Shown: positions 2,172 to 62,939 of the stretch, piece after piece | Numbering within the stretch: position 1 is the first letter of the stretch | How the letters are laid out: each line of letters starts with the position of its first letter | NCBI RefSeq assembly: GCF_000002075.1 | Contig: NW_004797314.1 | Coordinates: forward strand, 1,432,736-1,496,735 | Reading direction: 5' to 3' | Length of the DNA: 64,000 bases | Source of the DNA: Aplysia californica | Taxonomy: Eukaryota | The notes under the pieces: generated by a model | What the model was told of the DNA's origin: nothing | Seen by the model: the letters and a program-made list of their open reading frames with translations, nothing else | Database searches by the model: none | Position numbers and translations under genes: made by a program

Positions 2172-2548
2172 ATAACCACTTTCTTATTCAAAGCTCAAGT
2201 TAGCAACATCGATGCATCAAAAGAAGTGGCAGCTGCTGCAATATTCACAACCAAATAATGCTCTTGAATAAAAATGAAAGTATAATTATAATAGTGATGT
2301 TTGTTAATTTATTTGATTTCAGACAATTGTATCTGTCTCTTGCCCACAGTGTGGTGTGTATCTCAAAATTACCCCACTTGTGATATCTCTTTTTTGAAAG
2401 TTTGTAATCCCCCCTCATCCCTTCATGAATGTTTTTTTTCTTAAAATATGATAGGCCTTTGTGTATTCCTTTATTGGCTTTATGTTTTGCTGTTGAACTT
2501 GAACTTTATTTTGTTGCTCCACAGAGCTGACAGAGGTATTTGCTGACC

Positions 2549-2771
2549 ATGAAGTACCGAAGCACTCGTGGGGATGTGAAAGGTGTTTCCTTTAAGGATC
2601 TCCTCCTCTCTGGATATGCAAGCGACGGCGGCATGTTGTTGCCTGAGAGTTTTCCTCAAGTGTCCACCGAGTCACTGAGAAGCTGGGCCGGACTCACATA
2701 CGAGCAACTTGCTTATGAGGTGATCTCTTTATTCATCACTGAGGAGGACATTCCAGCAGATGATCTCAAAG
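2549..2771 (+). CDS. THNSL2: THNSL2-like coding exon 1
   Basis: ATG at 2549 (MKYRSTRG...DDLK). An acceptor cag at 2522-2524 implies an upstream UTR exon. Donor gtagat at 2772, phase 1. Confidence 0.9.
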
Positions 2772-11431: not shown

Positions 11432-11464
<33 letters not shown>

Positions 11465-16807: not shown

Positions 16808-17057
16808 CACAACTTATTTATTTTTTGCTCCTCCAATTTCTTTTCTTTTTCTTTTTGTCCCTGATATCTGTTTTAACTCTTCACTAAGAAATCTTTATTC
16901 TTGCGTTCTTGTTTTAGTATTTCATATTATGTATTTTTTTCTCCTTCAATTTCTTGTCTTTACTGGGTTTTTTGTCCCTTGTACACATGTTAACTCTCAC
17001 AAACAATCTTTACTCCCATATATTAAAAAAAATGTTTTCCACATTATTTATTTTTTC
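16808..17057. repeat. Degenerate tandem repeat, about 116-bp unit, at the giant gene's stop codon and 3'UTR
   Basis: Units start near 16808, 16923 and 17040 (CA.ATTAT.TATTTTTT...TTTTGTCCCT...TTAACTCT.CAC...AATCTTTA). Confidence 0.7.
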
Positions 17058-17389
17058 CCAGACTTTTGTTGCCTCCCTCTCCTTGGGGCGGGCTGAGTGG
17101 GTTCTTCCACTGTTGCCTGTTTGTCTCCTCCGGCCTGAGCCTCGGACAACAGCCTCACTATCCTGTCCTTGTTCATGGTCAGCTGACTGGTCTCCTGGCG
17201 GGCCTCAGCCAACTGTTCTTGAGCTGTGGTCAGTTTGTCCTTGTGAAGACCTTGGTCCTTCCCTCGGCTGCTCTCAAGGAGCTCCAGTTCTGCGCTGACC
17301 TCTTCTTCCAGTGCGCGAATCTTGTCCTGCTGTTGGATCAATTGCTGGTTAACTCTGGCAAAGTCTGCACTGAGCTCATCCACTTTGTC
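17048..17389 (-). CDS. Giant TM protein last exon v46 (terminal coiled coil, basic tail)
   Basis: DKVDELSADFARVNQQL...PRRGRQQKSGKK, TAA at 17048-17050. Confidence 0.86.
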   Translation of the reverse strand, partial: DKVDELSADFARVNQQLIQQQDKIRALEEEVSAELELLESSRGKDQGLHKDKLTTAQEQLAEARQETSQLTMNKDRIVRLLSEAQAGGDKQATVEEPTQPAPRRGRQQKSGKK

Positions 17390-20300
17390 CTGTGGATAAA
17401 TGGTTTTAAAAAATTTTGTTTAATTGAAAACAATTACACAAAGGAATATCACTTATAAGTACCAAAAAAAATTATGAGTTGGAAAAGAAGGCACTTAACA
17501 CAAATTTTCCTCACTTCACCCAGGTGTGAATGGGTACCTTGCCATAGACCTGTGAAAGATTTTTCAGTATTTTAGAGCCTGTATAATGGCAGCGTGCACT
17601 GTATGTTTTCCACGAAGTTAAGATTGTTTCCCAGTTGTTTATTATTGAAAATTTTACTAAGATCTACAACATGTTTACCCTTTACTTTCTACTGGCGGCT
17701 AGCATTCCCTGCCCATGCACCAGAGTCACTATTAATAAATATACAGTGTAGTCTGCTGTTAGCAAAATTTGCAGGACCACCTAATTTTCTTTTGATTAGC
17801 CGAGTTTTTGGTTTAGAGAGGTTGCTCAAATGCAAAAAAAATTTTTTTTCGGATTGATCGCGTTTGATTTAAGCAGACTCTACTATACATAGTGCAAGAC
17901 AAAAGTAACTTAAGACAGGTTATTTGACCTATTAGAGGAAACTTATAGGTATTTTTCCCAAGGGTGCTGCTTTTCATTGTAAGTAAAGAAACAGCTTGAG
18001 TTATTATTTTGGCACTACTTTCACCACAGTGTTGGTTATTTGAATGGTAGAGCTTCAGAACCTACAACCATCTCCAACAGGATGTTGTACAAAATAAATA
18101 ATCTTCTTTCAGAACCTTGGCCAAGAAAAGCTGCCGAACGTAAATTTGAACCTAGATTGGCAGTACTGGCAATAATATTAGTGTAAAGGTGCTTATATTC
18201 AGACGAAAAGATGATTCATAACCAAGCATGTCAAAATAAATATGCTATACATGTATAAATAAGAACTACAGCTTGATGATTGGTATACATCCACAAGCCA
18301 TGACAGTCTTCACGTTTCTGGAGAGTGCTACAGAGCACCAACTCTGAGCATTGCCAAAGTGCACAGGTCACCCAGTATAGAAACAGACAATATTCAGTCA
18401 AAAACTTGTAGGATTGAATCCTTTATCTAACCTTGCAGTCCTAATAGCAAAGCAATAACAAATGAAAACCCAGAAATATTTTTGGGAGTCTCTCTGTTAA
18501 CTGATCTTAACAAGAAATTAATATAGCATTGTCATACTTAATTCAGGTGCAGCCATCATCAGATATAAAATAACATTGTTGTATTGAGTCATAGCCGTAC
18601 AAAGAGATGGGTAAATAATAATTACAACATAACACGAATAGGTCGAACACAGCAGACTCGAAATCACGCATCCTTCGAACCATGTCTGCAGTCCCATTTT
18701 TCTTCTTCTTTATCTCTGTAAGATATCCTACGAACTACGGATCCCTTGAACTATTGAGGCTGGTCCTGACAAATTCGAGCTATCCGTGTCATAGTGTATG
18801 TAGGAGAGAAGCAGAAAGACCATACCATACCTAGACAGCTACCAACCACCCATAGAATAACAAATGGGTAATTTTAGAACTCCAAAAAGAAGGAGACAAC
18901 ACAAAAGTTCCATGCATTGTCAAGAAGAGAGCAAAAAACCGTAAACATTCCAAATTTTACCTGAGCAGAGTCTGGGGTTGGAGCAGCCTTCCGTGGTTTG
19001 TCTGTTTTGTCAGCTCCGTCTCTGTCCAGTGAATTCTCAAATGTTTGATACAAGGCGTTGCCACTCATATTTGCCATCACAAATGATGGAGCAGCCTGTT
19101 CTTGATTGGCTGCAGAGTTTCCTGAGGTAGCAGAAAACAAAAATAGCACATACATAACTTAGAATCTTGAGGAAGAGTAAAAATACTTTAAAACTCTGAA
19201 ACGTACCTTTAGAAGGAAGTAAAAGGAATCATCTTGACATGAATGTTTAAACAGAATACTGCTGCCAGTACCATTTTCACTATGCAAAGTTTTTTTCTGA
19301 CTGATAAGCCATTGGTGAACTTGAATTTTGTTATTTTGTTTAAGCTTCTGAACTTTCACAGCACTTGACATGCAACTAAAATTAGCTCACTATTCAGGAA
19401 TTTATATTCAAACAGACAGTCTTTACAACTGTATCTGTTATCCAATCTATTGCTGCATGCAAGACACAGACAGTAAAGTGTGGTACTGGTATAAATAAGG
19501 GTAGGTAATGTGTCCTTTCTATCCCTCTGTTATTTCTGTCATCGTCACCTCTTTTACTTCTTTCAACACTGCAGGATCACCAAATATCGATATTCCTCTC
19601 ATCAACTCAAAATAACACGAGTGAAAAGAAGCTTATTATACCCTCACCTGACGTCGAAAATTTACTGCTCAGATTTGCCATTTGTGACACAACATTTTCA
19701 TGTGATCCTTGACCTTTAGCCTGATGAACTTTGTCCTCCATGTCTCCCAGCATGCTCTGGAGCTTGTTCAGAGAGGCAAAGTCATTGTACTTGGCAATTC
19801 TGTTCGTGGTGGTCACGTGGGCAGGGAGAGAAATAATAAAATATAGCATTTTGGGGGAATTTAGCAACATGAACTAATAGGATAACAACTTTGAGATCTT
19901 TTTTAATAACCAAACTTCTATGTCTCTCTATATGAATACTGTTAGTACACTTACGTCCACAAAAATATTTTATAGGAGCTTTTTTCAGTGACATAGTAGG
20001 CCTTTACACTTGCACAAAGAGAGGCTTTGTGGCTTAAGGCTTACCCTTGGGACGGGAGCTTTCAGTTTATATCATTCCTTCCCATGGAGCTTGCATCATG
20101 AAATGCAAAAATATGAGAGGCAAACACCCCTCAAAACAGACATATTTTGCTCATTTCCAATATTAAATTTAACTTATAATCTCACTTCTTGTATCAGCAT
20201 TTACTTCTTTAAAAAGTCAATTTACACGACAAGCAGGAATAAAATAAGAACAAGAAGACACAAAAACTAACTTTTCTACACCTGAACCTCCACTAAAAAG

Positions 20301-23300
20301 CAAGCACGGTACCTGAAAGTTTTAGTTTTAGTTAGAGTTTTAAGACATTGGCAACATAATTAGATTACATTAAATGCCGAGGATTAGAGAAGTAATAAGA
20401 CAGTAACAAACAAAGAAAAGAAGGAGGACAGATAAGGACAATAAACATTTGATAGGGAAGGAGCAAACCACACCATAACATACAAACAAAACATCATTAA
20501 CTCTTTTATCTCCAGCAAGTTGCTCCCAGTGGCTCGTGGTTGGAACTGTCATTCCGGTGAGCCGATCAGCAGCTCCGGCACATTCTTTTAAGGTGACTTT
20601 GACATCAAATTACTTTTCGGTATTTGCTGAAAACAGGTCTCTTTTATCGAGATTCCATTCATTAGATGACACACTATCAAAATAGGTTGACTTGTTTGAT
20701 GTAATGATCAGTTTAGTGACGTTTTTGTCATTTTTAGATTTAGTACCACAATAGGGCCTCGGCATAGTGGGTTTAACCCCCTCAGAGATAAAGAGTTAAA
20801 CATCTTTACATGGGAAAACCTTTACACAGTACCTCTGAGCCATTCTTTCCTTGGTCAGCTGTGCCCCATCTCTCATGGTATCAGGCATGAGACGCACGTC
20901 CAACAACTCCTCCATCATGCGTGTCCGGGCGTCCTCGCTCGGGCAACTGTCAAACATGGACTGGAGAAGCTGCTGAGCTTGGGCAGGGCTGAGATTTGAG
21001 CCAGGGTCTGTTGCATTGTTCTCCACCCGCCTTGTCTTAGACATGAACAAGTCATCACAGACCACAGTAAGGGCACGCTGGTATTCCTTCTGGAATTCTG
21101 GCGATGTGTCGTCCCTGAGGTCACCTGGATAAAAAAAACAAAACGCATCACTTTTGAGATATAGTGGAGTCAGTTTAAACCAAACACACTTAATCTGAAA
21201 AAGCAGTAAACCAAAATAAAATAAAATCACTGATCTTGTTTTTTCTTTATATATGAGCAACCTCTCTAAACTGAAGGTGTCAGGATAGGCAGATTTGCTA
21301 GAGATGCTCTTTTCAACATCTTATTTAACCCCTTCACTGCTGAAAAATTTCCATCAACATCTGTACCTAGAAAGTTAAATGTTAATTCAAGGAATATTTA
21401 AACTCAGAGAATGGTTTCAGAATAAGCAAAATCACAAGCTGTAACTAAAACAACTAAAACATGTGTCAACCAGATGAAACAATACGAGTGGAGAATACAA
21501 GCCAGAACCTACGTCTACCCAGCAGTGAAGAGGTTAAGCTAGTTACATCATAAACTGTAGTATAGGGCTAGAAACCACTATTATTTCCAAATAAAAAGAG
21601 ACAGACTGGAAGCGCCAGTGAAGACTTCAGATAAGCCCTAACAAAATCAAATTGACATCAAAGTACAGGTGAGGAAAGGCAGGCTAAGGCAGACACGAAG
21701 AACATACTCTCTGGGAAGACACAACAGTAAAATAAAGCTCAAACCATCAACTTTTCGGTGTTGTTAATAGCGTAACAGTAACATACATTGCTAGATTGAT
21801 TATAGCAACGATAAGTCTCAACAGCAATTCACAGCCAACTTACCAGACTTGATATGAGCCAGGCAGTGTGTCAACACAAGCACGTACTCTCCCACCGTCT
21901 CCAGGCGAGCAGCTCGGAGGTACAGGATCCTGTTGTTGGCATCGAAAGCAAAAGAGTTCCGGTACATGTTGCGAGAGAGCTGAGGGCTGCTGGGAATGCT
22001 CTCCGCCAGCAGGATGTTGACGGGTGCATGCTGGCAACGGCGAGCTATGAGCTGAGCAACATGGCAACCAAACTTGTAGATGACGAGAGAGCGAGCATTC
22101 AGCTTGTTCAAGTCCATGGGCTTCAGTTCTTTGTCGTTCTCCCAAGACTTTTCACGCTCGTCTACAAAACCATCACCTGGAGGAGCAGTAGGGTCAGGAA
22201 TAGGAACACCATCGTCTAATAATAGTGGGAAGTTATTTAGTACCTAGTACCTTACATGGATGTTGCGTGAAAACTAACAGTGAACACTCTTTTCAAAGCA
22301 TACACATCAGGCATCTGAATGACATTCAAATATGTGGCTTGTTATATTCATTTATAGCCTACTTTTTGAATACTGTGATATTTGACTTTAATAATAGGCC
22401 TACCTAATGATGATTCTTTCGCACACAAGTCAGACAAACATTTATACTAGATACTAGTACAGTCACTTTCTCCCCCATTCTAGCCACGAACCACTCACCT
22501 TCTGGCACACTCGGTGCAGACCTAAGACTGCCTCCAGCCACCGCCTGTTTCATGTTCTCCAGTTTCTGGTACAGCGGGGAAGCCATCAGCAGAGACATGA
22601 GCTCAGCCTCGTTGAGTGGAGCGGCCATTGCGTATGCTGGGGGCATCTCCTGGCTGCCCTGAGGCTGTGCTGGTTCGTCCGATGCCCCAGAGGTGGGCGC
22701 TGGTAGGGCTGCTGCAGTGAGCAGAGGCATTGACTGCTTCTGAGCACTGAGACCATCTGAGTTTAGAGCCTGGTTCAACGCCAGAATCTGCAACAAAATC
22801 CATTATATATATATTATCAGTTTCAAGAATTTACACCAGCCTATTACCATCGAAAGGTACAAACTTTAAGGACAACATAAAACACAAAGCAAAAGACTGG
22901 ACTATTGTCCATATCTAAAAGCATTTTTTACCACAAAAGTAAAAGAGAAGCGGCAGATAGATCCATTCATTTTCTTTTCCTATAGAAACCCATAAGGAAC
23001 TGTCCTACAATATCAGCTCTTTCAAAGCCCCAATCGGCGAGACATCTTGCTACATCAACCCCCAACCCTGGAAATAAACAACACCCATAAACTGAAATTG
23101 ATTACATCTTGAAAAGACTTCCCCTTTCTATAACATGGCATCAAAGCCAAAGGGCACAATCCAAAACAACAGCTGGGTTAGCAATAAATGGAAAAATCTA
23201 AATGAGAGGAAACTTCCTCTTGGAAAAGCAGAACAATTTAGAGGTGACGTCCCCTCTGCCAAGCATGTTAAAAACACATCAGCAGATTAAGGTTAAAATA

Positions 23301-23520
23301 GAGCAGGAAACCCAAAACTGAAGAAACTCCAGTCAGTATTATCAGAGATACCTTCATGGCCTTTAAGATTTAGAGCAAAAACAGAACATAAACAAACAAA
23401 TCAGTTCAACTATGAGTTGAAGACCATGTAGTGAGATAGGCCTACCCTTAGATCTAGTGGGTGTGAAGCGTGTGTGTTTGTTTATATGTGTGGGTGAGTG
23501 TGTTTTGAACATGTGAGTGT

Positions 23521-23572
<52 letters not shown>

Positions 23573-46916: not shown

Positions 46917-46981
<65 letters not shown>

Positions 46982-55900: not shown

Positions 55901-56258
55901 TGTGTCAGCAAATTTGTATTGGCATGTTACTGCTTTTTAAAAAATGCAGTAGCCAAGTGCACAATTAAATGAAGATTACCAAAATGATTGTCAAGTAAGT
56001 TAAGGTAAATAAGAACAAACTTAGTATAAGAAAAATTGCAAATATTGTACTTTCATTCACACCAGCTTTTTACTTTATGAAACGTTAACACATTCACCAT
56101 TACATTAGCCAGCTCATAAATATATAATTTGATTGTGAAAAGTCCAGCCATGAAATGACCTACGTCTTCAGTATCATGCCCTTTCTGTCATTGATATAAT
56201 GATCCATGAAATTTGACAGCAAAGATAACAAGATAATGAAACTTTTATTTTTACATGG

Positions 56259-56303
<45 letters not shown>

Positions 56304-56790
56304 GACACACACACACACACACATATGCAATCAAATGTTTCAATGATAGAGGCATGACTCTAAAAGAGAGCCCTATGGGCTAACAAAATCTGTTCCCTAG
56401 CTTTTGAAATTAATTTTTCATTCTGAATTCTAATCAGACGAACCAAGAGACAGTAGAATACTAAAAAAAACTACCAGTTTTTGATAGGAAATGTTCCTTC
56501 GTTAAAGAGCCCCATACCTTAAAAATTTGTACTTATATTTNNNNNNNNNNNNNNNNNNNNNNNNNNNNNNNNNNNNNNNNNNNNNNNNNNNNNNNNNNNN
56601 NNNNNNNNNNNNNNNNNNNNNNNNNNNNNNNNNNNNNNNNNNNNNNNNNNNNNNNNNNNNNNNNNNNNNNNNNNNNNNNNNNNNNNNNNNNNNNNNNNNN
56701 NNNNNNNNNNNNNNNNNNNNNNNNNTGTGTCAGTGTGTGTACATGTATGGGTGTGTATGTACACATGTGTGAGTGTACGTGTGTGAGTGT

Positions 56791-56860
<70 letters not shown>

Positions 56861-59800
56861 GTGTGTATGTGCTTTGATTAAAAGAAAACTGTTATCAGAT
56901 ATACTCCTGTAGAACAAAAACAAGAACATAAACCACATACATTACTTTCATGACAACATCACAGCGAAAAAATGAAACAAAGAATACGAGGTCAAGTCAG
57001 CAACAAAAGATTTGAGCTGAGACCTACAATAAACAAAAGGTTAGCTTAATTTTCAGCACAACAAAAGAAAGGTTGTTAGTAATTCCCTCCATTTAGGCCA
57101 CAAAATACACTCTCAGACTGAAAAAGATGCAGTCAATCTGAACAAGCAAAATAAATGTATTGACACATAAACATAAATTTTCAATAGGAAAAAAGATATA
57201 TCTATAAGCACCTTAAAAAGTTTGTGGGTTGGCACAGAAAAGCCCATAAGTTCCACAATCATTATTGAAATCCTTACCTATTTAAAGTCTTATCCAGCCA
57301 AATACAAGCACTTTACTTTTTACTTGAAGTCATATCCTTGTTTAAGTATAAAGTTCTAAAGTTTATGAGACATTACAAGTAACATTTCCCTTTGAACAAA
57401 AAAACAATTTAAAAACCAACTTATCTCTATGTCAACATAAACTTGCAAATTTTGATAGGCTTTTCTGTTCAATCACAAATTTTCTGAGTACATGATAGAC
57501 CTGTAAAAAATTCAATAAAAAAAAAAAAAACAAGAAACAAAAACAAAGCAAAGAGTACTTTCAAGAAAAGAGTAATACTTTCATTTGTTCTAGTTTCTTT
57601 CACAATATCAACACATGTGAAAATACTTTGTTAGAAAAATTTTAATGAAGAGAACCACAGACAATAAAGTTGTCCTTGCAATTTATACATGGTTGTTTCA
57701 CTAAGTACTAGGCAATTGATTACAGAATATATACCATCAGCCTGCTGTGAAAATAATATGTTAAGACCAGAATTTTTTTGGTCTAATTGCAGTTACTTAA
57801 CCTATGATATCAGTTACATGTGCTCAAGAAATATTTTGTGGAAATTCAAATTCTAAATGTTGAAAAAAGCAAGAGACAATATTTAATGTCGGTACATACA
57901 ATTGTTAAACAAACAAAACACTTTGTCTTTCTCCTGTAAAATTTTGCTTTCTTGGCTTAGTACATTTAACAATTTGCAAATGATATTAAACATTTTTACC
58001 CACCAGTATACCTCATGATGCCTCCTAAAAGAGCTGTTGTTTTCGGTTACTTTTTTCTGAATAAAAACCCTTTCCTGAAACCTTTTGCAATACAAAAAAA
58101 TCTTTTATTTGGCGAGTAAGTTTTGCTTGACAAAAATAAGGTGTGGCAACCAATATGGAACAAAAAAACATTTAACTTTGGATTCAAATTTTCAATTCTT
58201 TGTATTTTGTATTTCAATTTATAGATCTGAATTGCTTAAGGCATCAATTTAACAATCAACTCCACCTTGTCAAAGATGCCAAAGACCAAATTATGTCCAC
58301 AGAAAAACAATATATATAGATTTTAAAAAGAAAACAATGTAAATCTGGGGATTTGGGATGATAGGTCATTCCATGGAAACGAAAAAGAATTCTAATTGGA
58401 AAACGTACAAGAAAACCATACTTTTAAATCAAAAAGACACACCAAAATCACACTATTTTTGTTTTTACGCTAGAGCCTTACTGGACACATAAAAAGTCAT
58501 TTCGAAGATTGACACTCATCCCACTAGGTAACGGTAAAGAAGAAGAAAACAGGAAAGAAAGAGTGGCAAAGATGAAATACCAAAGAAAACATCAATAGCA
58601 TACGACTGAGTTCAGACGTGCAGGTGCTCAGTTTTTTCCTACCACATTCTACCAAAAGGAGGATTGCACCCTCTACTGGTGTACAATGGGTCTATCTAAA
58701 ATTCTGATCCCCTGAGGGACCAAGATCTAATTCTTTGTCAAACAGAAACAGCACAGACTAAAAACATAGAAAGTTTATAAGAATTCACTTCACTAAAAAG
58801 TATTTTATAACACCCTACGACTGAATCGTCTAACAAATACAACATAGTTTTAAATCCAAAGGAGTGTATGCTGTACCATACTTAGGACTTCAGTCTTGCA
58901 CGGAAGTCATATCAAGTTCGTTGGTGAGAGTGGGTTTCACTGCATTTTTTGCAAACCAGCTTAACTCTTTATCTCCGGCAAGCCGCTCCCAGTGGCTGGC
59001 AGTCGGAATCGCTTTGCCGGTGAGCCGCTGAAAGCGGCTCTGGCACATTACTTTAAGATTACTTTTCGGCAATTGCCAAAAACAGGTCTCTTTTACCGTA
59101 AGTTCATTCATTAGATGAAGAACTATCAAAATAGGTTTGCTAGTTCCGCTTTAATGACCCATTTAATGATGTTTTTGTCATTTTTAGATTTAGCACCAAA
59201 AAAGAGCCCCGGTGTAGTGGGTTCACCCCCCTCGGAGATAAAGAGTTAAATATATATTATATATATGAATATATATTGATGTAATAATCAGACAGCAACA
59301 ATATCATACACGAAAAGCGTATTAGTGATGTAAACAAATACAATAACTGTAAACAAAATGATGCTTGAACTCCTGATAAGTTCTCTTTGTTTTAGTAATG
59401 AATCAAGCAGCCATTAAAATACATTGCAATATGTGCATTTAACCAACCAAAATCCACGCCATCGTTCAACACCCAATTGCTATGGATCCACAGCATAACA
59501 ATAACTTCCACATGCTAGATGCAAAAATCCACATAGAAAGGAACGAAATGACCAAAACACTTATTGTGTGGGTTTTTACCATTTATGACTGTAACATTGG
59601 CTGAAGAGAAAAAATGGTTTTATTAAGGTTAAATTGATATGAGATGAGTAATTTGAAAAACCCCCCAAAATAATGATTTTAATGAGAGGTGAAAATAATC
59701 TAGTTTTAGACATGAAATAAGGAAGTTGTTAAACAATTAATAGCTCTTGCAAGTGCATATTTATTAACAAAGGTGAGAGGAAAAAGTAATCAGTATTATA

Positions 59801-62800
59801 GAAGGGTGGGTTCAAAGAATAGAGACCAAAACAAATCATGCATGAAAATTACAGAAATGTTGGGGTACAAAAAAGATGTGGAAAAATCCACAGTTAAAAT
59901 GAAAGGCATTTATTATGAGGAAGGTTTTACAGAAGAATTTCATGTCCATAGGATGTTTTTCAGAACGGTTAAAAGAAATTATCATCAACATATTATAGAG
60001 AATCAGTTTGGCAAGACTCCAAATAGTATGTTCCCATGAGGCATAAGCGTGTAAGTCAATGAAGGAACAGTCTACCAAATACAGGAAAACATTAAAGGGT
60101 GAGATGAAGTATTTCTGGTTTAACAAACAGTATTGAACAACAGTGTACCAGAAGACACAATCAAAATCTTCCAATCTCTAAAAACATTTTGCAGAAAAGC
60201 TATCAAATCCTTAGCTACTTCATCTTTAACTTTGGTGTCTAGTAGTAGTAGTTGTAATGTTCCATGCTTCATCTTTCTTACCTGCATTGGGATCACAGTA
60301 GTAGCCAGCTGAGCAGTCTACGCATGTGCTCTGTCCCTGGTTTGGCTGGTAGGTTCCGTTGAGACAAGATGTAGGGATGACCGCTCCTGCCTCACAGTAG
60401 TGACCGGCCCAGCACAGATAGGTTCCAGGTGTTGGTGTGTCTTGACCACCAGGACAGTAGTAGCCAGGGTCACAGAGGGCAGTAGGTACAGTGTTGCCCA
60501 GACCTATTTCATAGGACAAATAGTTAACAAATTGTATGAGAGACACTATAATATACGTATCTACTCACAATGTTGCACTACATGGATGCTCAGCTTTTAT
60601 AATGACCTATTTTTTTCCCCCTGTAGTAGAGCTCTTATAACTCACTAGTATCATCACATATTGTTGACTGTACATGTTAGTCCAGTCAAAAAGGTGTCAA
60701 CTCACAAGTGAAAGACTGAGTATCTGATTTCTTGCTGTTCCTGATTAAGACATAGCATTTATGGGAAAGGTTCTTTGCCTATCTGACCAAGTTTCTCCTA
60801 TGAGAAGAGACCAAAAATATCAAACAGAGCCTTGGAGATAAAAACAGAAAGTTGCAATGAACAAGCAACCAAAGTGAGTTGAAGCCATAAGACACTTCAG
60901 TGGAAAGGGACACAAGTCTACAATATATCTCTTCAACTTGAGAGAAAAGCTAAACAACAAACATTTTGACCTCCTACTTATGCAATATTAAATTCTTTTT
61001 GTTAAAACTACAAATAAAACCAATCTCACCTTGACAGTAAGATCCAGCGGTACAGTTGGTGCAGTCTCCCACACTCTGTCCCTGTGGGGAACCAGAGAAT
61101 GTTCCGGCAGGGCACGGCTCAGGTACACTGGTCCCGACTTCACAGTAGTAGCCCACGGGACACACCCACTGGTTGGCTGAGCTGCTGGTGCCGTTACAGT
61201 AGAAGCCACTGCTGCAGTTTCCTGTTATCATAAGTGAGTTTATTTTAGATGACAGAGCTGGAGGATGACCAAAAAGGAATCCAAAGATCATTAAGTGCTG
61301 AATGAGAGTAAGGGAGTCTCATATAGCCTGTATCATTAAGTATTGAGAGTGTAAAAGGATGAAGGACACAAGAATATTGAAGGTCTGGAGTCCAAGTTGT
61401 GTTTGTAAAAGTCACCTTGTTAAGGGAAGGTAGAAGAAAACCAGGTCTGCCTAGAACAACAACCCACAGCAAAAATTAATAATCAATCTCCATCCAATAA
61501 CAAAACATACCCTAGCATGGAAAGGAATACTATATTCTGGTATGAAAATGGGTAATATACATTACAATCAGCTCCACTGCTAGTTGCAAAACCTAATGTC
61601 GATTACCCCTGAGATCACAAATATTGTTTTCTCTACCAGAATTTACGTTAAGAGCCCAGAACTGTTTGTACATGGGAGTAGGCGCAATAAAAATTATCTA
61701 CATCATCATTATTATCAGTATTTTTTAAATCATTATTTTCACTATTTTCTTCATAACCAAGAGATAGTTTGACCCTGACAAAGGCAGCACCCACCTGTGG
61801 GAATGGCCAAGCCTGGAGTCTCACAGTACTGTCCAGGGTCGCAGGCTGTCGGTTTAGCAGAGCCTTGTGGGCAGTAGTAGCCGATGGGACACAAGCCACC
61901 ACTGGTCATTTGGAAGGCTGAACACACACAGTCCCACATCGGAGTGCATGTGTCGTTGGAGTACAGATCACTGGAATTTTGCAGTAAGTAATCAGATAAG
62001 AAGAGTGATGTATTTTTCGAAGCTCAAAGCACTTTCCTGTGTATTCTCTTATAAACATGTAGCTGCTGCCCTTGTTACTGTCCAATAGCTCATTACCTAA
62101 GTCCATTGTCATGAAGTAGACGTAGCATCACCAGGTGCACAATGATATAACTGATGGCTAAAGTGAAAATAAAACACTGGCTTAAACATCTCAATACGTT
62201 GACATTAGAAAACAAATTCAAGCAATCAGAATGTGAGCCACACTTTGGGCCTTCTACACTTCAACAAGTGAACCTGATATTGAGACTTGAACAAAATAGG
62301 TAAAGAAAGCTTAAGCACTTGTGTTGGAACAAAGCACAGGTGAATTCTGAGTTTGCAACAGAGATAAGGATATGCTTCTTTTAATATCACAATAAAACCT
62401 TCTTTCATTTGTCACATCATATAGCCAAAAGAGACTTTTCACATGTTTAAAACTACTCAAAATGACTTCTCTTCAAGACAAATTTACGAAAAGCCGTTGT
62501 CATCACCAAATAAGACTGTTAAAACTCCAAAAATGCAGACAAATTTATTTCCAAAAAGTAGAAAACTGACTTGCAATGTTGTAGTTCAATAGGGGTAAAA
62601 GAAAAGAAAAGAAATGTAATGTGTTCGTGCACACGATGCGAGTTCATTGTGAACACAGCAGAAAGTAAAGTTGTAACAATTGCTTCCTTCACATCTTTTC
62701 ATATGTTTATTCTGTACACAGTTGAAACAAAAGCTAATAAGAGTTGCCATTATCTCCACAAACTAACCTTGTTGTTCCATTGACTGTAGTGAGGTTTCCA

Positions 62801-62939
62801 GAGTCATAGGGCCTGCGCTGGAAAGACTTGCCGGCACAGAAGAAGCCCTCATCACAGAGTCCAGTGGGGATCACATTGCCATGTCCCTCACAGTACTCAC
62901 CAGGAGGACAGTCCTGGCAGCTGGTCTCATTGGTAGCAC
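17048..62939 (-). CDS. Giant uncharacterised type-I membrane protein: Cys-rich GCC2_GCC3/Ephrin_rec_like repeats, one TM, long cytoplasmic coiled coil, C-terminal zincin-like domain; 5'-partial (46 exons, about 3,150 aa visible)
   Basis: 46 exons (listed individually as v1-v46) total 9446 nt. Every junction is GT-AG and phase-compatible, giving one open frame to TAA at 17048-17050. The first visible exon begins in phase 1, so the start codon and signal peptide lie beyond the window. Confidence 0.88.
17490..17630 (+). mobile_element. SINE central-domain fragment (Nin/Deu-type)
   Basis: CACCCAGGTGTGAATGGGTACC ... TGGCAGC..CTGTATG resembles the Nin/Deu-SINE core (recognised from memory). Confidence 0.5.
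17742..17887. mobile_element. TA-flanked MITE (family B), copy 1
   Basis: TACAGTGTAGTCTGCT ... AAGCAGACTCTACTATA; colinear with 25279-25458. Confidence 0.7.
18961..19121 (-). CDS. Giant TM protein exon v45
   Basis: NSAANQEQAAPSF...TPDSAQ; phase 1/0. Confidence 0.82.
19648..19799 (-). CDS. Giant TM protein exon v44
   Basis: IAKYNDFASLNKLQSMLGDMEDK; phase 2/1. Confidence 0.85.
20497..20799. mobile_element. piggyBac-like MITE, family copy 1
   Basis: TTAA-CTCTTTTATCTC ... GAGATAAAGAG-TTAA; colinear over its length with 58961-59249. Confidence 0.85.
20833..21124 (-). CDS. Giant TM protein exon v43
   Basis: DLRDDTSPEFQKEYQRALTVVCDDLF...ERMAQ; phase 1/2. Confidence 0.87.
21325..21537. mobile_element. 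piggyBac-like MITE
   Basis: TTAA-CCCCTTCACTGCTG ... CAGCAGTGAAGAGG-TTAA. Confidence 0.8.
21844..22176 (-). CDS. Giant TM protein exon v42 (C-terminal globular domain)
   Basis: DGFVDEREKSWEND...NMYRNSFAFDANNRILYL...VLVLTHCLAHIKS; phase 1/1. Confidence 0.88.
22499..22787 (-). CDS. Giant TM protein exon v41 (Pro/Ala-rich linker)
   Basis: ILALNQAL...LMSLLMASPLYQKLENMK; phase 0/1. Confidence 0.86.
23518..23569. repeat. (GT)n microsatellite
   Basis: Directly visible. Confidence 0.93.
23637..23906 (-). CDS. Giant TM protein exon v40 (coiled coil)
   Basis: ADLEKMKANGASKDEQDRLIKEHERSV...LQNDE; phase 0/0. Confidence 0.87.
23990..25052. mobile_element. Non-autonomous Tc1/mariner (pogo/Tigger-like) element
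   Basis: TA + CAGTAGTCTCCGCCTAAACGC ... GCGTTTAGACGGAGACTACTG + TA; subterminal GCGTGCGTTT repeats. Confidence 0.87.
25279..25458. mobile_element. TA-flanked MITE (family B), copy 2
   Basis: CAATGGAGTCTGC ... AAGCAGACTCCACTGTA. Confidence 0.7.
26428..26591 (-). CDS. Giant TM protein exon v39 (coiled coil; not in ORF track on this strand)
   Basis: FEKSEGKRVEAEVVSFAKELELETQKEKEKQEK...KEKMK; phase 1/0. Confidence 0.86.
27056..27203 (-). CDS. Giant TM protein exon v38 (coiled coil)
   Basis: EFAEALRQFSPD...MRREQE; phase 0/1. Confidence 0.87.
27805..27993 (-). CDS. Giant TM protein exon v37 (coiled coil)
   Basis: KLPLSPDEKAERRAALLNEQQ...LKEKHYK; phase 0/0. Confidence 0.87.
28400..28556 (-). mobile_element. 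tRNA-derived SINE remnant
   Basis: Minus strand ...TGGTGTAGTGGTTAGACAC...AGTTCAATTCG (A/B-box-like) without a complete cloverleaf. Confidence 0.4.
28853..28993 (-). CDS. Giant TM protein exon v36 (coiled coil)
   Basis: ELRDLEDEFATRKR...RHEQELAALE; phase 0/0. Confidence 0.87.
30207..30311 (-). CDS. Giant TM protein exon v35 (not in ORF track)
   Basis: AVQIEQKAIEEGIRENGEEDSDKVVEAVLARRHAQ; phase 0/0. Confidence 0.85.
31357..31560 (-). CDS. Giant TM protein exon v34 (coiled coil)
   Basis: LMAAHAQEVDALTERL...VRLKQ; phase 0/0. Confidence 0.87.
31986..32166. mobile_element. About 180-bp TA-flanked MITE (family A)
   Basis: TA-CAGTCGAAATTGTCT ... GCAGGTTCGACTG-TA; opposite orientation to 14419-14600. 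Confidence 0.78.
32172..32378 (-). CDS. Giant TM protein exon v33 (coiled coil)
   Basis: ERAQEELKKRHQTERDQL...QDEMAA; phase 0/0. Confidence 0.87.
33413..33754 (-). CDS. Giant TM protein exon v32 (coiled coil)
   Basis: LIALTPEADRLTAQRIVDQHRRRL...AMKRQQ; phase 0/0. Confidence 0.87.
34759..34965 (-). CDS. Giant TM protein exon v31 (coiled coil)
   Basis: LSSQLTQEGRHQDKERAL...KLSDQ; phase 0/0; an alternative in-frame acceptor would start the exon at 34953. Confidence 0.82.
35651..35854 (-). CDS. Giant TM protein exon v30 (coiled coil)
   Basis: EAVGTQGLVSEEKVKDL...QHDQERGQ; phase 0/0. Confidence 0.86.
36366..36560 (-). CDS. Giant TM protein exon v29
   Basis: ALEAGLPPPVRG...LTDQM; phase 0/0. Confidence 0.86.
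36564..36930. repeat. Degenerate tandem repeat, about 57-bp unit
   Basis: Recurrent CACAG(A/G)AAAATGAT..GA.A.AAAC unit; two clear copies (36564, 36621) and several decayed ones. Confidence 0.7.
37059..37234 (-). CDS. Giant TM protein exon v28 (coiled coil)
   Basis: DLKDGEIKEILSQHEKDL...RQMEDLRQKLAERRR; phase 1/0. Confidence 0.87.
37565..37875. mobile_element. piggyBac-like MITE
   Basis: TTAA-CCCTTCGAGCCCCA ... TGGGGCTGGAAGGG-TTAA. Confidence 0.8.
38213..38387 (-). CDS. Giant TM protein exon v27 (correct frame not in ORF track)
   Basis: ASGANGELLGRQNGERIQLEQELSREERDAMENLL...LESKLQ; phase 0/1. Confidence 0.85.
38964..39142 (-). CDS. Giant TM protein exon v26
   Basis: TSQGREDDLMAALKILLDKLNSG; phase 1/0. 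Confidence 0.85.
39562..39667 (+). pseudogene. Inverted, decayed duplicate of the acceptor and first 29 codons of exon v27 (pseudo-exon)
   Basis: Plus-strand ctaacatcttttatctcag|acctttggtgctaatggtgagctg... aligns without gaps to minus-strand 38406-38301; 88/106 identical by hand count; GAA>TAG stop in the copy. Confidence 0.9.
39687..40007 (-). CDS. Giant TM protein exon v25
   Basis: [40 protein letters not shown]; phase 1/1. Confidence 0.88.
40526..40596 (-). CDS. Giant TM protein exon v24
   Basis: KTDALGPRPGVEGAEADPILADK; phase 2/1 bridges its neighbours. Confidence 0.82.
40946..41132 (-). CDS. Giant TM protein exon v23 (transmembrane helix)
   Basis: LIAFFAALVLLLVVAVIVW then RPHDS...KHWKPQYRKLG; phase 1/2. 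Confidence 0.9.
42458..42606 (-). CDS. Giant TM protein exon v22 (not in ORF track on this strand)
   Basis: EVTIEVKATGTSC...NEEPDWGIIV; phase 2/1. Confidence 0.86.
42942..43108 (-). CDS. Giant TM protein exon v21 (membrane-proximal domain)
   Basis: VYVKNHLYNSNPTFDYGAF...FAHAFTAAGTYVFAD; phase 0/2. Confidence 0.88.
43585..43754 (-). CDS. Giant TM protein exon v20 (RRRLL site)
   Basis: DLPTLGSGVPIGRRRLLSTT...NPALCLELGEIVLF...SHYP; phase 1/0. Confidence 0.87.
44338..44467 (-). CDS. Giant TM protein exon v19
   Basis: TKTDVYGPSE...VINFFDTGVAGSVY; phase 0/1. Confidence 0.84.
45099..45249 (-). CDS. Giant TM protein exon v18
   Basis: CQCDNYKDYTEICNITCQ...GTTTAF; phase 2/0. Confidence 0.86.
45590..45990 (-). 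CDS. Giant TM protein exon v17 (Cys-rich)
   Basis: GMYGTRE...CPEGTYNDLEGQQYCRVCGSSA...CECLSGYIFYD; phase 0/2. Confidence 0.88.
46522..46742 (-). CDS. Giant TM protein exon v16 (Cys-rich repeat)
   Basis: YKADHPSG...CPAGYYG...CPIGSYCPEG; phase 1/0. Confidence 0.88.
46921..47005. repeat. (GT)n microsatellite
   Basis: Directly visible. Confidence 0.93.
47118..47299. mobile_element. About 180-bp TA-flanked MITE (family A)
   Basis: TATAGTGAAATTGTCC ... GCAGATTCGACTG-TA; colinear with 31986-32166. Confidence 0.72.
47728..47901 (-). CDS. Giant TM protein exon v15 (Cys-rich repeat)
   Basis: ASIEIDCRPGYFC...CLYPFYCPEG; phase 1/1. Confidence 0.88.
48209..48421 (-). CDS. Giant TM protein exon v14 (Cys-rich repeat)
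   Basis: MASYEWNLCPPGFFC...CRPGYYCPN; phase 1/1. Confidence 0.88.
48901..49062. mobile_element. About 160-bp TA-flanked MITE (family A)
   Basis: TA-CAGTTCAACCTGCTCTA...CACCTGTACAAATGGCCACT as in the 14419 copy; ends GACAATTTTGACTATA. Confidence 0.72.
49072..49227 (-). CDS. Giant TM protein exon v13 (Cys-rich repeat)
   Basis: TTNPEPCPVGQYC...CPAGYWCNYT; phase 1/1. Confidence 0.88.
50028..50287 (-). CDS. Giant TM protein exon v12 (Cys-rich repeat)
   Basis: NGQLYGNCSAGYYC...CPAGSLCPE; phase 2/1. Confidence 0.88.
51036..51144 (-). CDS. Giant TM protein exon v11 (Cys-rich repeat; not in ORF track)
   Basis: TVTPIPCADGTFTYDNMTKLQSQSDCLPCEAGQFC; phase 1/2. Confidence 0.86.
51697..52023 (-). CDS. 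Giant TM protein exon v10 (Cys-rich repeat)
   Basis: GQAETDCLPCPGGYYC...CPQYNFCPN; phase 1/1. Confidence 0.88.
52661..52993. mobile_element. piggyBac-like MITE
   Basis: TTAA-CTGATTCAGCCCGCAG ... CTGCGGGCTGAATCAG-TTAA, perfect 16-bp TIR. Confidence 0.85.
53027..53191 (-). CDS. Giant TM protein exon v9 (Cys-rich repeat; not in ORF track)
   Basis: DCDAGYFCEGGADSQAP...CILGHYCPQGTTIMVPCPAGTIRNNT; phase 1/1. Confidence 0.87.
53705..53845 (-). CDS. Giant TM protein exon v8 (Cys-rich repeat)
   Basis: YYCPEGQLVPCPAGTFNNIT; phase 1/1. Confidence 0.88.
54312..54532 (-). CDS. Giant TM protein exon v7 (Cys-rich repeat)
   Basis: YVCTGGSTVPTP...CPAGYFC...CPAGYMC; phase 2/1. Confidence 0.88.
55144..55364 (-). 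CDS. Giant TM protein exon v6 (Cys-rich repeat)
   Basis: VNTTDNSTFTGNDRCPIGYYC...CPRGRYC; phase 0/2. Confidence 0.88.
55624..55877 (-). CDS. Giant TM protein exon v5 (Cys-rich repeat)
   Basis: GPVSTPTPCPAGYYCPP...CWAGFYCTGG; phase 1/0. Confidence 0.88.
56260..56323. repeat. (CA)n microsatellite
   Basis: Directly visible. Confidence 0.93.
56541..56725. other. Assembly gap
   Basis: Run of N. Confidence 0.99.
56726..56871. repeat. Imperfect (GT)n microsatellite abutting a gap
   Basis: Directly visible. Confidence 0.92.
58961..59249. mobile_element. piggyBac-like MITE, family copy 2
   Basis: TTAA-CTCTTTATCTCCG ... CGGAGATAAAGAG-TTAA, perfect 13-bp TIR. Confidence 0.87.
60282..60503 (-). CDS. 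Giant TM protein exon v4 (Cys-rich repeat)
   Basis: LGNTVPTALCDPGYYCPGG...CSAGYYCDPNA; phase 1/1. Confidence 0.88.
61030..61221 (-). CDS. Giant TM protein exon v3 (Cys-rich repeat)
   Basis: NCSSGFYC...CPVGYYC...CTAGSYCQ; phase 1/1. Confidence 0.88.
61795..61970 (-). CDS. Giant TM protein exon v2 (Cys-rich repeat)
   Basis: DLYSNDTCTPMWDCVC...CPIGYYCPQG; acceptor ttccag at 61971 gives the phase 2 needed; phase 2/1. Confidence 0.82.
62768..62939 (-). CDS. Giant TM protein exon v1 (Cys-rich repeat)
   Basis: ATNETSCQDCPPGEYC...CDEGFFC; phase 1/2. Confidence 0.88.

What the first reader, a model, noticed from the sequence alone, without database searches (positions are those of the whole stretch)
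17048..62939. Giant orphan receptor-like protein: Cys-repeat ectodomain, single TM and about 1,650-aa cytoplasmic rod
Seen: the scattered ORF fragments splice into one 46-exon frame (>3,100 aa, 5'-incomplete). It has about 1,460 aa of ectodomain with dozens of CPxGxYC units and many N-x-S/T sequons, a single hydrophobic helix (WGIIVGLIAFFAALVLLLVVAVIVW) followed by basic residues, then a very long coiled coil and a terminal globular domain. Established: CPxG(Y/F)C units are typical of GCC2_GCC3/Ephrin_rec_like repeats, which are abundant in ciliate, apicomplexan and stramenopile surface proteins. Inference: an ancient, functionally uncharacterised surface sensor or tether linking an extended extracellular rod to the cytoskeleton, possibly ciliary or gamete-related. 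From memory and unverified, it resembles uncharacterised vertebrate predicted genes such as mouse Gm9195/Gm32742. Automated annotation would probably split it into two genes.
Basis: partly seen in the sequence, partly recalled or inferred. Interest (0 to 1): 0.8.

Follow-up and report, generated by a model that had tools for sequence, protein, structure and literature searches.

The report
Giant conserved single-pass surface protein gene
The window holds the last 46 exons of a real, very large sea-slug gene for a membrane-spanning protein with a long cysteine-rich outer stalk, a long charged inner helix and a protease-like end lacking the catalytic residue; this family runs from protists to mammals and has never been studied.

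Summary
Observation confirmed. An independent splice-aware chain gives 46 GT-AG exons on the minus strand (62939 to 17048). Elysia chlorotica's protein matches all 46 exons. One uninterrupted 2,174-aa ORF on a contig from a close relative spans exons 16-46, so both "halves" are one gene. The assembly gap lies in an intron beside a microsatellite, and the flanking exons adjoin in orthologues.

- It is not an orphan. Uncharacterised relatives occur from Discoba to mammals, including hamster "putative gene 9195".
- The gene is far larger. At least 41 more exons (about 3,400 residues) lie upstream of the window, and Cys-repeat exons continue for about 90 kb.
- The "coiled coil" looks more like an ER/K-type charged single helix.

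New here: the C-terminal domain has a Wss1/minigluzincin-like zincin fold with conserved H-x3-H-x8-D and never the catalytic Glu. The juxtamembrane ectodomain is cupredoxin-like. Function is inferred only: a transmembrane tether or spacer. A sibling note on this same window (s1-765325) had proposed the pseudo-protease; no notes on other DNA.

The parts
46522..62939 (-). Exons 1-16 of the in-window model (62939-62768, 61970-61795, 61221-61030, 60503-60282, 55877-55624, 55364-55144, 54532-54312, 53845-53705, 53191-53027, 52023-51697, 51144-51036, 50287-50028, 49227-49072, 48421-48209, 47901-47728, 46742-46522): Cys-repeat (CPxGxYC-type) ectodomain stalk
   Evidence: Exon chain. Sub-threshold Ephrin_rec_like hits per exon, 19.5-22.6 bits against a cut-off of 23.1. 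All 16 exons collinear in Elysia at 71-93% identity.
56541..56725 (.). Assembly gap (N), inside intron 4
   Evidence: Flanked by (CA)n at 56260-56323 and (TG)n at 56733-56871. Exons 4 and 5 adjoin in 6 orthologues. Junction residues conserved in Elysia.
45099..45990 (-). Exons 17-18 (45990-45590, 45249-45099): distinct Cys-rich domain conserved across the whole family
   Evidence: Matches at 30-47% identity in protist, reptile and fish members. In the model of a homologue the first ~80 residues align to the EphA2 cysteine-rich domain, Z 6.5.
42458..44467 (-). Exons 19-22 (44467-44338, 43754-43585, 43108-42942, 42606-42458): linker plus cupredoxin-like juxtamembrane beta-domain; the end of exon 22 starts the TM helix
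   Evidence: Alignment A2. AF2 model pTM 0.75 with domain pLDDT 92-97. Pseudoazurin Z 7.2 and plastocyanin Z 7.1. Foldseek plastocyanin TM 0.59.
42458..42473 (-). First part of the TM helix (WGIIV + split Gly codon)
40946..41132 (-). Exon 23: rest of the TM helix (41132-41074) and basic cytoplasmic juxtamembrane segment
   Evidence: Junction e22-e23 adjoins in 8 orthologues.
40526..40596 (-). Exon 24 (corrected acceptor ttgatcttcag|T): short linker
   Evidence: The 40635 acceptor gave 13 extra codons against Elysia and the Logan ORF. The corrected length matches both exactly.
39687..40007 (-). Exon 25: conserved cytoplasmic motif (DLDDFNVRVLYDKLEDQNLHL...) found 85-190 residues after the TM in all members
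   Evidence: 29-63% identity from protists to reptile.
23637..39142 (-). Exons 26-40 (39142-38964, 38387-38213, 37234-37059, 36560-36366, 35854-35651, 34965-34759, 33754-33413, 32378-32172, 31560-31357, 30311-30207, 28993-28853, 27993-27805, 27203-27056, 26591-26428, 23906-23637): highly charged helical rod
   Evidence: 43-62% E/K/R/D/Q, heptad a/d occupancy 0.25-0.6, 0.1-0.35 i/i+3,4 opposite-charge pairs per residue. No Pfam family. The homologue's equivalent segment is modelled as one long helix.
22499..22787 (-). Exon 41: Pro/Ala-rich linker, then conserved helix (LMASPLYQKLENMK) leading into the globular domain
20833..22176 (-). Exons 42-43 (22176-21844 with corrected acceptor, 21124-20833): zincin-like (Wss1/minigluzincin-like) domain
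   Evidence: 342 cluster representatives. AF2 core pLDDT 95-98. Wss1 5xbn_A Z 9.4, rmsd 3.1 A, 108 residues. Selecase, jannalysin and Wss1 top Foldseek. Acceptor correction.
21854..21868 (-). H-C-L-A-H: HxxxH site without the catalytic Glu
   Evidence: His 127/140 and 128/140 conserved. Second position is A/C/T/S and never E. 96% and 93% in 94 homologues.
21108..21110 (-). Conserved Asp nine residues after the second His (candidate third metal ligand)
   Evidence: 90% conserved in 94 homologues. Present in the window as the second D of RDD.
18961..19799 (-). Exons 44-45 (19799-19648, 19121-18961): variable tail. Exon 45 has no match outside the close relatives
   Evidence: Elysia 58% and 46%.
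17048..17389 (-). Exon 46: terminal helical segment, TAA stop at 17050-17048
16894..16899 (-). First AATAAA after the stop (151 nt downstream; others at 228 and 377 nt)

Best explanation
The stretch is the 3' part (46 exons, 3,147 codons) of one very large protein-coding gene on the minus strand. The genome is that of a heterobranch sea slug, Aplysia californica according to earlier notes. The gene is a member of an unnamed, uncharacterised protein family with a fixed module order: signal peptide, a variable number (0 to over 200) of TNFR/Ephrin_rec_like-type Cys repeats, a distinct Cys-rich domain, a cupredoxin-like juxtamembrane domain, one TM helix, a conserved cytoplasmic motif, a highly charged alpha-helical spacer of very variable length, a zincin-fold domain with H-x3-H-x8-D but no catalytic Glu, and a short helical tail. 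Shown: the gene structure, its continuity across the TM, the family, the two folds and the missing Glu. Inferred: the topology is type I, with the Cys-rich, sequon-rich part outside. The protein most likely acts as a transmembrane tether or spacer. A stiff disulfide-rich glycosylated stalk would project far from the cell. The conserved membrane-proximal modules on both sides would form the functional core. The ER/K-like helix (about 1,000 residues here, roughly 150 nm if fully helical) would hold the zincin-like head at a set distance from the membrane. That head would act as a metal-dependent, non-catalytic peptide- or partner-binding module rather than as a protease. My confidence is about 0.9 for 'one real gene of this family with this architecture' and about 0.3 for the tether/spacer mechanism.
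For: Gene and continuity: the 46-exon GT-AG chain. All 46 exons are collinear in Elysia with adjoining junctions. The single 2,174-aa ORF P0278 on a 7.5-kb Logan contig spans exons 16-46. Uninterrupted ORFs or transcripts in protists carry both halves: Fabomonas Trinity ORF of 7,499 aa and L019 of 4,706 aa. Forty of 45 junctions adjoin in at least one of nine orthologues. Topology: 136 Cys and 34 sequons before the TM against 6 and 6 after, with basic residues after the TM. N-terminal signal-like segments occur in Fabomonas, Chromosphaera and L019. Family and fixed order. Zincin fold. Glu absent and H/H/D conserved. Cupredoxin-like domain. Spacer: composition; its length varies from about 150-250 residues in vertebrates to over 2,000 in Fabomonas while the end modules stay. 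Convergent neighbour gene and polyA signals bound the 3' end.
Against: No experimental data exist for any family member. Both fold matches are moderate (Z 7-9.4, Foldseek E 0.009 and weaker for the zincin domain) and were obtained on homologues (45% and about 50% identical), not on the window's own joined sequence. A conserved H/H/D triad could also support catalysis by an unusual mechanism. The spacer idea rests on composition and length variation alone. My heptad measure is crude and cannot exclude a dimeric coiled coil.
Confidence: 0.6

Rival explanations
1. Two genes: a Cys-rich surface or secreted protein gene and a separate cytoplasmic coiled-coil gene that only appear to join.
For: Some database models cover only one part: Acanthaster 'trichohyalin-like' 1,949 aa, B. 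floridae 1,869 aa and Saccoglossus 1,326 aa. There are no reads from this species.
Against: Those short models still contain the juxtamembrane ecto-module and the TM. P0278 is one ORF from exon 16 to exon 46. Protist single ORFs carry both halves. The TM helix itself is split by intron 22, and that junction adjoins in 8 orthologues.
Confidence: 0.03
2. The C-terminal domain is an active intracellular metallopeptidase with a non-canonical general base, so the protein is a receptor with proteolytic output.
For: Zincin fold. H-x3-H-x8-D conserved at 90-96%. About a third of members have Cys after the first His.
Against: The catalytic Glu of HExxH is absent in all 140 homologues examined, and the position is A/C/T/S with no single conserved residue. 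The vertebrate branch has largely lost the His pair while keeping the domain, which fits a binding role better than catalysis.
Confidence: 0.1
3. The cytoplasmic rod is a canonical dimeric coiled coil, so the protein is an obligate parallel dimer.
For: Long uninterrupted helices are predicted. Weak hits to coiled-coil proteins. Exon 46 and parts of exons 25-26 and 36 have higher a/d occupancy, 0.5-0.6.
Against: Exons 27-40 have 43-62% charged or Gln residues, 13-28% hydrophobic residues, a/d occupancy mostly 0.25-0.5, and dense i/i+3,4 opposite-charge pairs typical of ER/K single helices. The only Pfam hints are compositional, such as Arg/Glu-rich.
Confidence: 0.3
4. It is specifically a cilium-, flagellum- or gamete-surface filament protein (mastigoneme-like hair or sperm-surface tether).
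For: The named protist members come from flagellates, plus Chromosphaera: Percolomonas, Fabomonas, Diphylleia. Foldseek's best hit for the Cys part is the Chlamydomonas mastigoneme protein, E 5.6e-4. Zebrafish si:ch211-286b4.4 is in a testis-over-ovary gene list.
Against: The mastigoneme match is only to generic Cys modules (TM-score 0.05-0.12). The taxon sample is small and not a systematic presence/absence test. One list entry is not localisation.
Confidence: 0.2
5. The Cys-repeat exons beyond about ext-102 kb (52 further exons reaching about 152 kb) belong to a separate upstream gene rather than to this one.
For: Exon-for-exon collinearity with the longest orthologue starts only at ext-101,599. 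No known member has an ectodomain over about 4,900 aa.
Against: Intron sizes stay uniform (253-2,263 nt) with no intergenic gap. No signal-peptide-like start exon lies at 101.5-108 kb. The genome has only one other, divergent copy of the C-terminal domain, on contig C341, and no second TM or cytoplasmic exon set lies upstream. Orthologue models lack signal peptides, so they are themselves 5'-truncated.
Confidence: 0.45

Closest known systems
Uncharacterised predicted genes of the same family: Elysia chlorotica EGW08_011303, Anneissia LOC117121631, Asterias LOC117306372, Glandiceps LOC144439946; vertebrate 'si:ch211-286b4.4', 'zonadhesin-like', hamster 'putative gene 9195'
   Same: Same module order. 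All 46 exons are collinear with Elysia, and 39-44 exons with echinoderm, hemichordate, amphioxus and mussel proteins. Vertebrate members share the exon 17, 20-22, TM and exon 25 modules, plus exon 42 in non-mammals.
   Different: None has any described function. Vertebrate members are 2,200-2,700 aa with a short spacer and a mostly degenerate HxxxH site, and the mammalian ones checked show no exon-42-like match. This gene is at least 6,500 aa.
Wss1/SPRTN (WLM/SprT-like) proteases and archaeal minigluzincins (selecase, jannalysin, abylysin)
   Same: Fold of the C-terminal domain: helix, three-stranded sheet, then a helix carrying H-x3-H. Wss1 Z 9.4 over 108 of 128 residues.
   Different: No detectable sequence relationship. 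The catalytic Glu is replaced by A/C/T/S family-wide. The candidate third ligand is Asp at +9, not the His or Glu seen in other zincins [from my own knowledge]. The domain sits at the end of a giant membrane protein, not in a small soluble or DNA-repair protease.
Ephrin_rec_like / GCC2_GCC3 (PF07699) and TNFR-type cysteine-rich modules: Eph receptor CRD, ELAPOR1, 4-1BB, Chlamydomonas mastigoneme Mst1
   Same: CPxGxYC-type units. Per-exon PF07699 hits lie just under the cut-off and orthologues lie above it. There is structural similarity to the EphA2 CRD, ELAPOR1 and the mastigoneme protein.
   Different: Most units are too divergent for the Pfam model. None of those proteins has the cupredoxin-like module, ER/K rod or zincin-like domain.
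Cupredoxins (plastocyanin, pseudoazurin, amicyanin)
   Same: Beta-sandwich fold of the juxtamembrane domain: Z 7.1-7.2 covering 91-99 of 98-123 residues.
   Different: No conserved Cys-x(n)-His-x(n)-Met copper site is visible in alignment A2. The domain is extracellular and membrane-anchored and carries a long disordered insertion.
ER/K single alpha-helix spacers (myosin VI/X, MAP7/ensconsin type)
   Same: Composition and charge pattern of exons 27-40. A sea-cucumber orthologue was auto-named 'Myosin-10', and a weak PDB hit was to ensconsin.
   Different: About 1,000 residues here, much longer than the ER/K helices I know of [from my own knowledge]. There is no motor or microtubule-binding domain. 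Single-helix behaviour has not been tested.

Membership tests
Unnamed giant family (Gm9195 / si:ch211-286b4.4 / LOC117121631-like) | Collinear module order: Cys repeats, exon-17-like Cys domain, exon-21-like module, TM, exon-25-like motif, charged rod, exon-42-like domain | tested here: met
Unnamed giant family (Gm9195 / si:ch211-286b4.4 / LOC117121631-like) | Significant sequence similarity of the C-terminal domain | tested here: met
   phmmer: 342 cluster representatives at E<=1e-3, 17 at E<=1e-30.
Ephrin_rec_like (PF07699) | Profile score at or above the gathering cut-off (23.1 bits) | tested here: inconclusive
   Five hits over four window exons scored 19.5-22.6 bits, all below the cut-off. 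Exons could only be scanned singly. Orthologue P0017 scores 28.6 bits, and PF07699 is precomputed for several others.
Ephrin_rec_like (PF07699) | Structural resemblance of a unit to the Eph receptor cysteine-rich domain | tested here: met
   EphA2 CRD Z 6.5, rmsd 2.4 A, 65 residues, on a homologue's model.
Zincin metallopeptidases (WLM/SprT-like, minigluzincin) | Zincin fold with an active-site helix | tested here: met
   Wss1 Z 9.4, abylysin Z 8.0. Foldseek top hits are all small zincins. Model of homologue P0020, core pLDDT 95-98.
Zincin metallopeptidases (WLM/SprT-like, minigluzincin) | HExxH with catalytic Glu | tested here: not met
   H-C-L-A-H in the window. Position 2 is A/C/T/S and never E in 140 homologues.
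Zincin metallopeptidases (WLM/SprT-like, minigluzincin) | Third metal ligand downstream of the motif | tested here: inconclusive
   Asp at +9 is 90% conserved. Whether it binds metal cannot be tested with these tools.
Zincin metallopeptidases (WLM/SprT-like, minigluzincin) | Sequence-profile match to a curated peptidase family | tested here: not met
   No Pfam or PDB sequence hit for the domain.
Cupredoxin | Greek-key beta-sandwich fold | tested here: met
   Pseudoazurin Z 7.2, plastocyanin Z 7.1, Foldseek TM 0.5-0.59. Z values are moderate.
Cupredoxin | Type-1 copper ligands (His, Cys, His, Met) | tested here: not met
   No conserved C-x(n)-H-x(n)-M pattern in alignment A2 (by inspection).
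Canonical coiled coil | Heptad periodicity with hydrophobic a/d positions | tested here: inconclusive
   a/d occupancy is 0.25-0.5 in most rod exons, measured with a crude home-made score. Oligomeric state is not testable here.
Auto-assigned names (zonadhesin, MEGF6, Notch, SCO-spondin, myosin-10, trichohyalin) | Their defining domains (VWD/TIL, EGF, Notch/LNR, myosin motor, S100) | tested here: not met
   No such Pfam family in any window exon or tested orthologue.

The most novel reading that the evidence does not exclude
This is a LECA-age transmembrane 'ruler'. One polypeptide of roughly 6,500 to 10,000 residues (up to 139 exons over 135 kb here) would couple a sub-micrometre disulfide-rich extracellular filament to a roughly 150-nm cytoplasmic single alpha-helix. 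That helix would end in a metal-binding pseudo-zincin that docks on an intracellular partner. The protein could be the self-anchored counterpart of flagellar hairs, retained in the ciliated or germ cells of animals. If the whole array is one gene, it would be among the largest single-pass membrane proteins known to me.
Probability: 0.15. Interest if true: 0.85.

Novelty: new variant of a known kind. Interest (0 to 1): 0.62.

Why it matters
This protein family is conserved from Discoba, ancyromonads, CRuMs and ichthyosporeans to molluscs, echinoderms, chordates and mammals. It has no name and no Pfam model for its two best-conserved modules, and I found no paper on it. Public annotation is a patchwork of truncated and misnamed models. 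The analysis gives the family a defined architecture and two fold assignments (a Glu-less zincin and a cupredoxin-like juxtamembrane domain). It also yields testable ideas: zinc binding without catalysis, an ER/K spacer whose length varies more than tenfold between lineages, and genetically tractable members in zebrafish and, by name, mouse (Gm9195). For genome annotation, it shows that the gene here extends far beyond the window and that the two 'halves' must not be split.

Tried and rejected
- The first exon chain used strict splice thresholds and skipped real exons, so it was replaced.
- ESM Atlas on exon 42 returned only unnamed phage and bacterial clusters at scores that shuffled sequences can reach.
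- A profile search of alignment A1 against PDB sequences gave only coiled-coil noise.
- Pfam on every cytoplasmic and juxtamembrane exon and on five homologues gave nothing above cut-off.
- Literature searches for Gm9195, Gm32742, dkey-103g5.4 and ch211-286b4.4 found only gene-list mentions. A keyword search on the architecture found nothing.
- A hidden exon in the assembly gap was rejected.
- Recent exon duplication in the rod was rejected: only two weak pairs, e28/e34 and e40/e34.
- Complete tandem paralogues upstream were rejected: the C-terminal domain has only one other, divergent copy, on another contig.
It was assembled only inside scripts to check frame, TM position and composition. 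Whole-protein scans of the InterProScan or DeepTMHMM type were therefore left out.
Full report
**What is in the sequence.** The Cys motif CxxGx[YFW] occurs 53 times in the three minus-strand frames and 5 times in the plus-strand frames. I wrote a splice-aware dynamic-programming chain using GT/AG site scores, open-frame and phase consistency, and a codon log-odds trained on the obvious exons. Comparison with close relatives then showed two acceptors 39 nt too far upstream. Exon 24 is 40596-40526 and exon 42 is 22176-21844.

**Final in-window model.** The model has 46 GT-AG exons, 9,446 nt, and 3,147 residues plus the stop. Introns range from 259 to 4,404 nt with a median of 611. Before it are 1,458 residues with 136 Cys and 34 sequons. 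After it are 1,664 residues with 6 Cys and 6 sequons, beginning with a basic stretch. The joined frame was built only inside scripts.

**The assembly gap.** The N run 56541-56725 lies in intron 4 (60281-55878). That intron has no open frame with Cys motifs, and the gap is bracketed by (CA)n at 56260-56323 and (TG)n at 56733-56871, a usual cause of assembly breaks. Exons 4 and 5 are phase-compatible. In six orthologues the residues matching them adjoin. In Elysia the junction residues (window NA-G-GPVSTP, Elysia NAGPVVTP) are conserved, and an 8-residue Elysia indel lies upstream of the junction. No coding sequence is therefore expected in the gap. Its letters were neither filled nor looked up.

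**One gene, not two.**
- The crinoid protein P0017 (3,985 aa) is collinear with 39 exons across ectodomain, TM and cytoplasmic part.
- With nine orthologues, 44 of 46 exons sit in collinear chains and 40 of 45 junctions join residues that adjoin in at least one species. This includes the junction that splits the TM, which adjoins in eight species.
- The sea slug Elysia chlorotica (P0302) matches all 46 exons at 36-93% identity.
- P0278 is one uninterrupted 2,174-aa ORF on a 7,551-nt Logan contig (SRR22428379; L027). It runs from exon 16 to exon 46 at Elysia-like identity. Because this genome has 30 introns over that span, the contig behaves like a spliced mRNA of a close relative.
- Protist members are single ORFs or Trinity transcripts carrying both halves.

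**The gene is much larger than the finding.** The window is G000:C44:1432736-1496735. I fetched 120 kb upstream. Minus-strand Cys-repeat exons continue to about ext-152 kb (window-extended coordinates), giving about 340 units against 53 in the window. Upstream there is no second set of TM, juxtamembrane or cytoplasmic exons, and the C-terminal domain exon has only one other, divergent match in the 927-Mb genome. A frame-consistent chain of 139 exons (about 9,800 codons) can be drawn from ext-151,932 to 17,048. Its introns are 253-2,263 nt upstream of the window (intron 4, at 4,404 nt, is the longest overall), with no intergenic gap. Because most repeat exons are symmetric phase-2 modules, frame continuity alone is weak evidence.

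**Collinearity with the longest orthologue.** The stronger evidence is exon-for-exon collinearity. Exons x53-x93 (ext-101,599 to 64,132) match acorn-worm (Glandiceps, P0173, 6,496 aa) residues 111-3402, with 40 of 41 neighbouring pairs adjoining. So at least 41 more exons and about 3,400 residues belong to this gene, giving at least 87 exons and about 6,500 aa. Whether the further 52 exons up to 152 kb also belong is open. I find no signal-peptide-like start exon at the interior points where orthologue models begin. A classic-looking candidate lies at ext-168,212, among unread or masked stretches. The animal orthologue models I examined lack a signal peptide, so most or all look 5'-truncated.

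**Not an orphan.** phmmer with exon 42 found 342 cluster representatives, 17 of them at E<=1e-30. Named members come from:
- crinoids, sea urchin, starfish and sea cucumber;
- acorn worms, amphioxus, a mussel, an annelid and Elysia;
- the ichthyosporean Chromosphaera (two paralogues of 6,410 and 7,076 aa);
- Fabomonas (7,499 aa), Diphylleia and the heterolobosean Percolomonas.

A search from the compact reptile member listed 135 relatives, almost all vertebrate: sharks, teleosts, amphibians, reptiles, birds and mammals. All are 'uncharacterized' or auto-misnamed (zonadhesin-like, MEGF6, notch 3, SCO-spondin, si:ch211-286b4.4). All members share one order of modules, while the number of Cys repeats (0 to about 220) and the length of the charged region vary widely.

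**Domains.**
- Cys repeats. Per-exon PF07699 (Ephrin_rec_like) scores are 19.5-22.6 bits against a cut-off of 23.1. Orthologues pass. A modelled unit aligns with the EphA2 CRD at Z 6.5. Foldseek lists the mastigoneme protein, ELAPOR1 and 4-1BB.
- Juxtamembrane module (exons 19-22). I cut this region from nine uninterrupted homologue ORFs by reference, aligned them with the window exons (A2) and modelled it (pTM 0.75, domain pLDDT 92-97). Both aligners give cupredoxins: pseudoazurin Z 7.2 over 99 of 123 residues, plastocyanin Z 7.1, and Foldseek TM 0.5-0.59. No copper-site pattern is conserved.
- Rod (exons 27-40). It is 43-62% E/K/R/D/Q, with low a/d hydrophobic occupancy and dense i/i+3,4 opposite-charge pairs. 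No Pfam family matches. This favours an ER/K-type single helix over a classical coiled coil, but the point is not settled.
- C-terminal domain (exons 42-43). The model of homologue P0020 with alignment A1 has a core at pLDDT 95-98. VIA-align ranks yeast Wss1 first (Z 9.4, rmsd 3.1 A, 108 of 128 residues), then abylysin and S. pombe Wss1 (Z 8.0). Foldseek's top hits are selecase, jannalysin, abylysin, Wss1, IrrE and BlaR1. There is no sequence-level link to any curated family.
- The metal site. Both His of H-x3-H are 93-96% conserved, and an Asp nine residues later is 90% conserved. The position of the catalytic Glu is A/C/T/S and never Glu. This supports the sibling note s1-765325 and extends it to the whole family.

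**How it most likely works (inference).** The protein is a type-I membrane protein. The conserved core lies on both faces of the membrane: the Cys domain and cupredoxin-like domain outside, the exon-25 motif inside. At the far cytoplasmic end is the zincin-like head. The two elements between and beyond, the Cys-repeat stalk and the charged helix, vary more than tenfold in length between lineages, which is what one expects of spacers. I therefore favour a tether or ruler. The stalk would reach outward and the helix would set the distance of a non-catalytic, probably metal-stabilised binding head from the membrane. I put about 0.3 on this mechanism, 0.1 on an active protease and 0.2 on a specifically ciliary or gamete role. 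The hints for the ciliary or gamete role are the flagellate hosts, the mastigoneme-like modules and a zebrafish testis-over-ovary list entry (10.1101/650218).

**Context.** A plus-strand threonine-synthase-like gene (Thr_synth_N at 2540-2794, E 3.6e-26; THR4_C at 12188-12487) converges on the 3' end. AATAAA signals lie 151-377 nt after the stop. Earlier notes on other windows name the genome Aplysia californica. That fits the close match to Elysia but was not tested further.

**Verdict.** The gene is a member of a real, ancient, unstudied family with an architecture not described in anything I could search. I score interest at 0.62 and rate it a new variant of a known kind (giant single-pass Cys-repeat surface proteins).

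Noticed in passing
G000:C44 upstream of the window; L002-L010 (ext 64001-152000), minus strand: About 93 further Cys-repeat exons, including one 1,353-nt exon at ext 94180-92828 that is 61% identical to the acorn-worm protein over 451 residues. The window holds a third to a half of the gene.
   Followed up: yes
L012, about position 4212 (ext-168,212), minus strand: A short ORF with a classic signal-peptide look (MKRLVIFASLLWLATG...), 16 kb beyond the last mapped repeat exon and between N runs. It is a possible first coding exon. Eight N runs of 0.1-2.7 kb lie between ext 148,702 and 170,320.
   Followed up: partly
G000:C341:256148-259841 (+); L024-L025: A second, divergent gene carries the zincin-like domain, here split over three exons (39-47% identity to family members). 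It may correspond to the second vertebrate paralogue, 'si:dkey-103g5.4'.
   Followed up: partly
window 2540-12487 (+): A threonine-synthase-like gene (Thr_synth_N, THR4_C) convergent with the giant gene. Three N gaps (1998-2171, 5452-5596, 10426-10586) lie within or beside its span.
   Followed up: partly
window 23512-23569 and 46921-47005: (TG)n microsatellites lie directly beside exons. One lies about 70 nt downstream of the exon 40 donor, inside the same open frame (read as HTHTHT in the ORF list). The other is upstream of exon 16. They inflate raw ORF lengths.
   Followed up: no
P0094 (L018), P0136 (L014), P0083 (L015): Minimal family members from metagenomes have almost no Cys repeats but keep the cupredoxin-like module, TM, charged rod and zincin-like domain. 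The repeats are therefore an expandable accessory, not the core.
   Followed up: partly
P0218 (cat), P0271 (hamster), P0109 (reptile): In the vertebrate branch the HxxxH site is mostly degenerate (reptile N-A-M-A-H). The mammalian members checked show no exon-42-like match at all, which suggests loss of the cytoplasmic head in mammals.
   Followed up: partly
L017:1-264: In one metagenomic member an ORF with a faint Ephrin_rec_like hit overlaps the start of the main ORF, so that gene appears split by a frameshift or intron in that assembly.
   Followed up: no
window 38877-39335 (+): A 152-aa ATG ORF lies antisense to exon 26. It is the subject of sibling note s1-765331 and was not examined here.
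   Followed up: no
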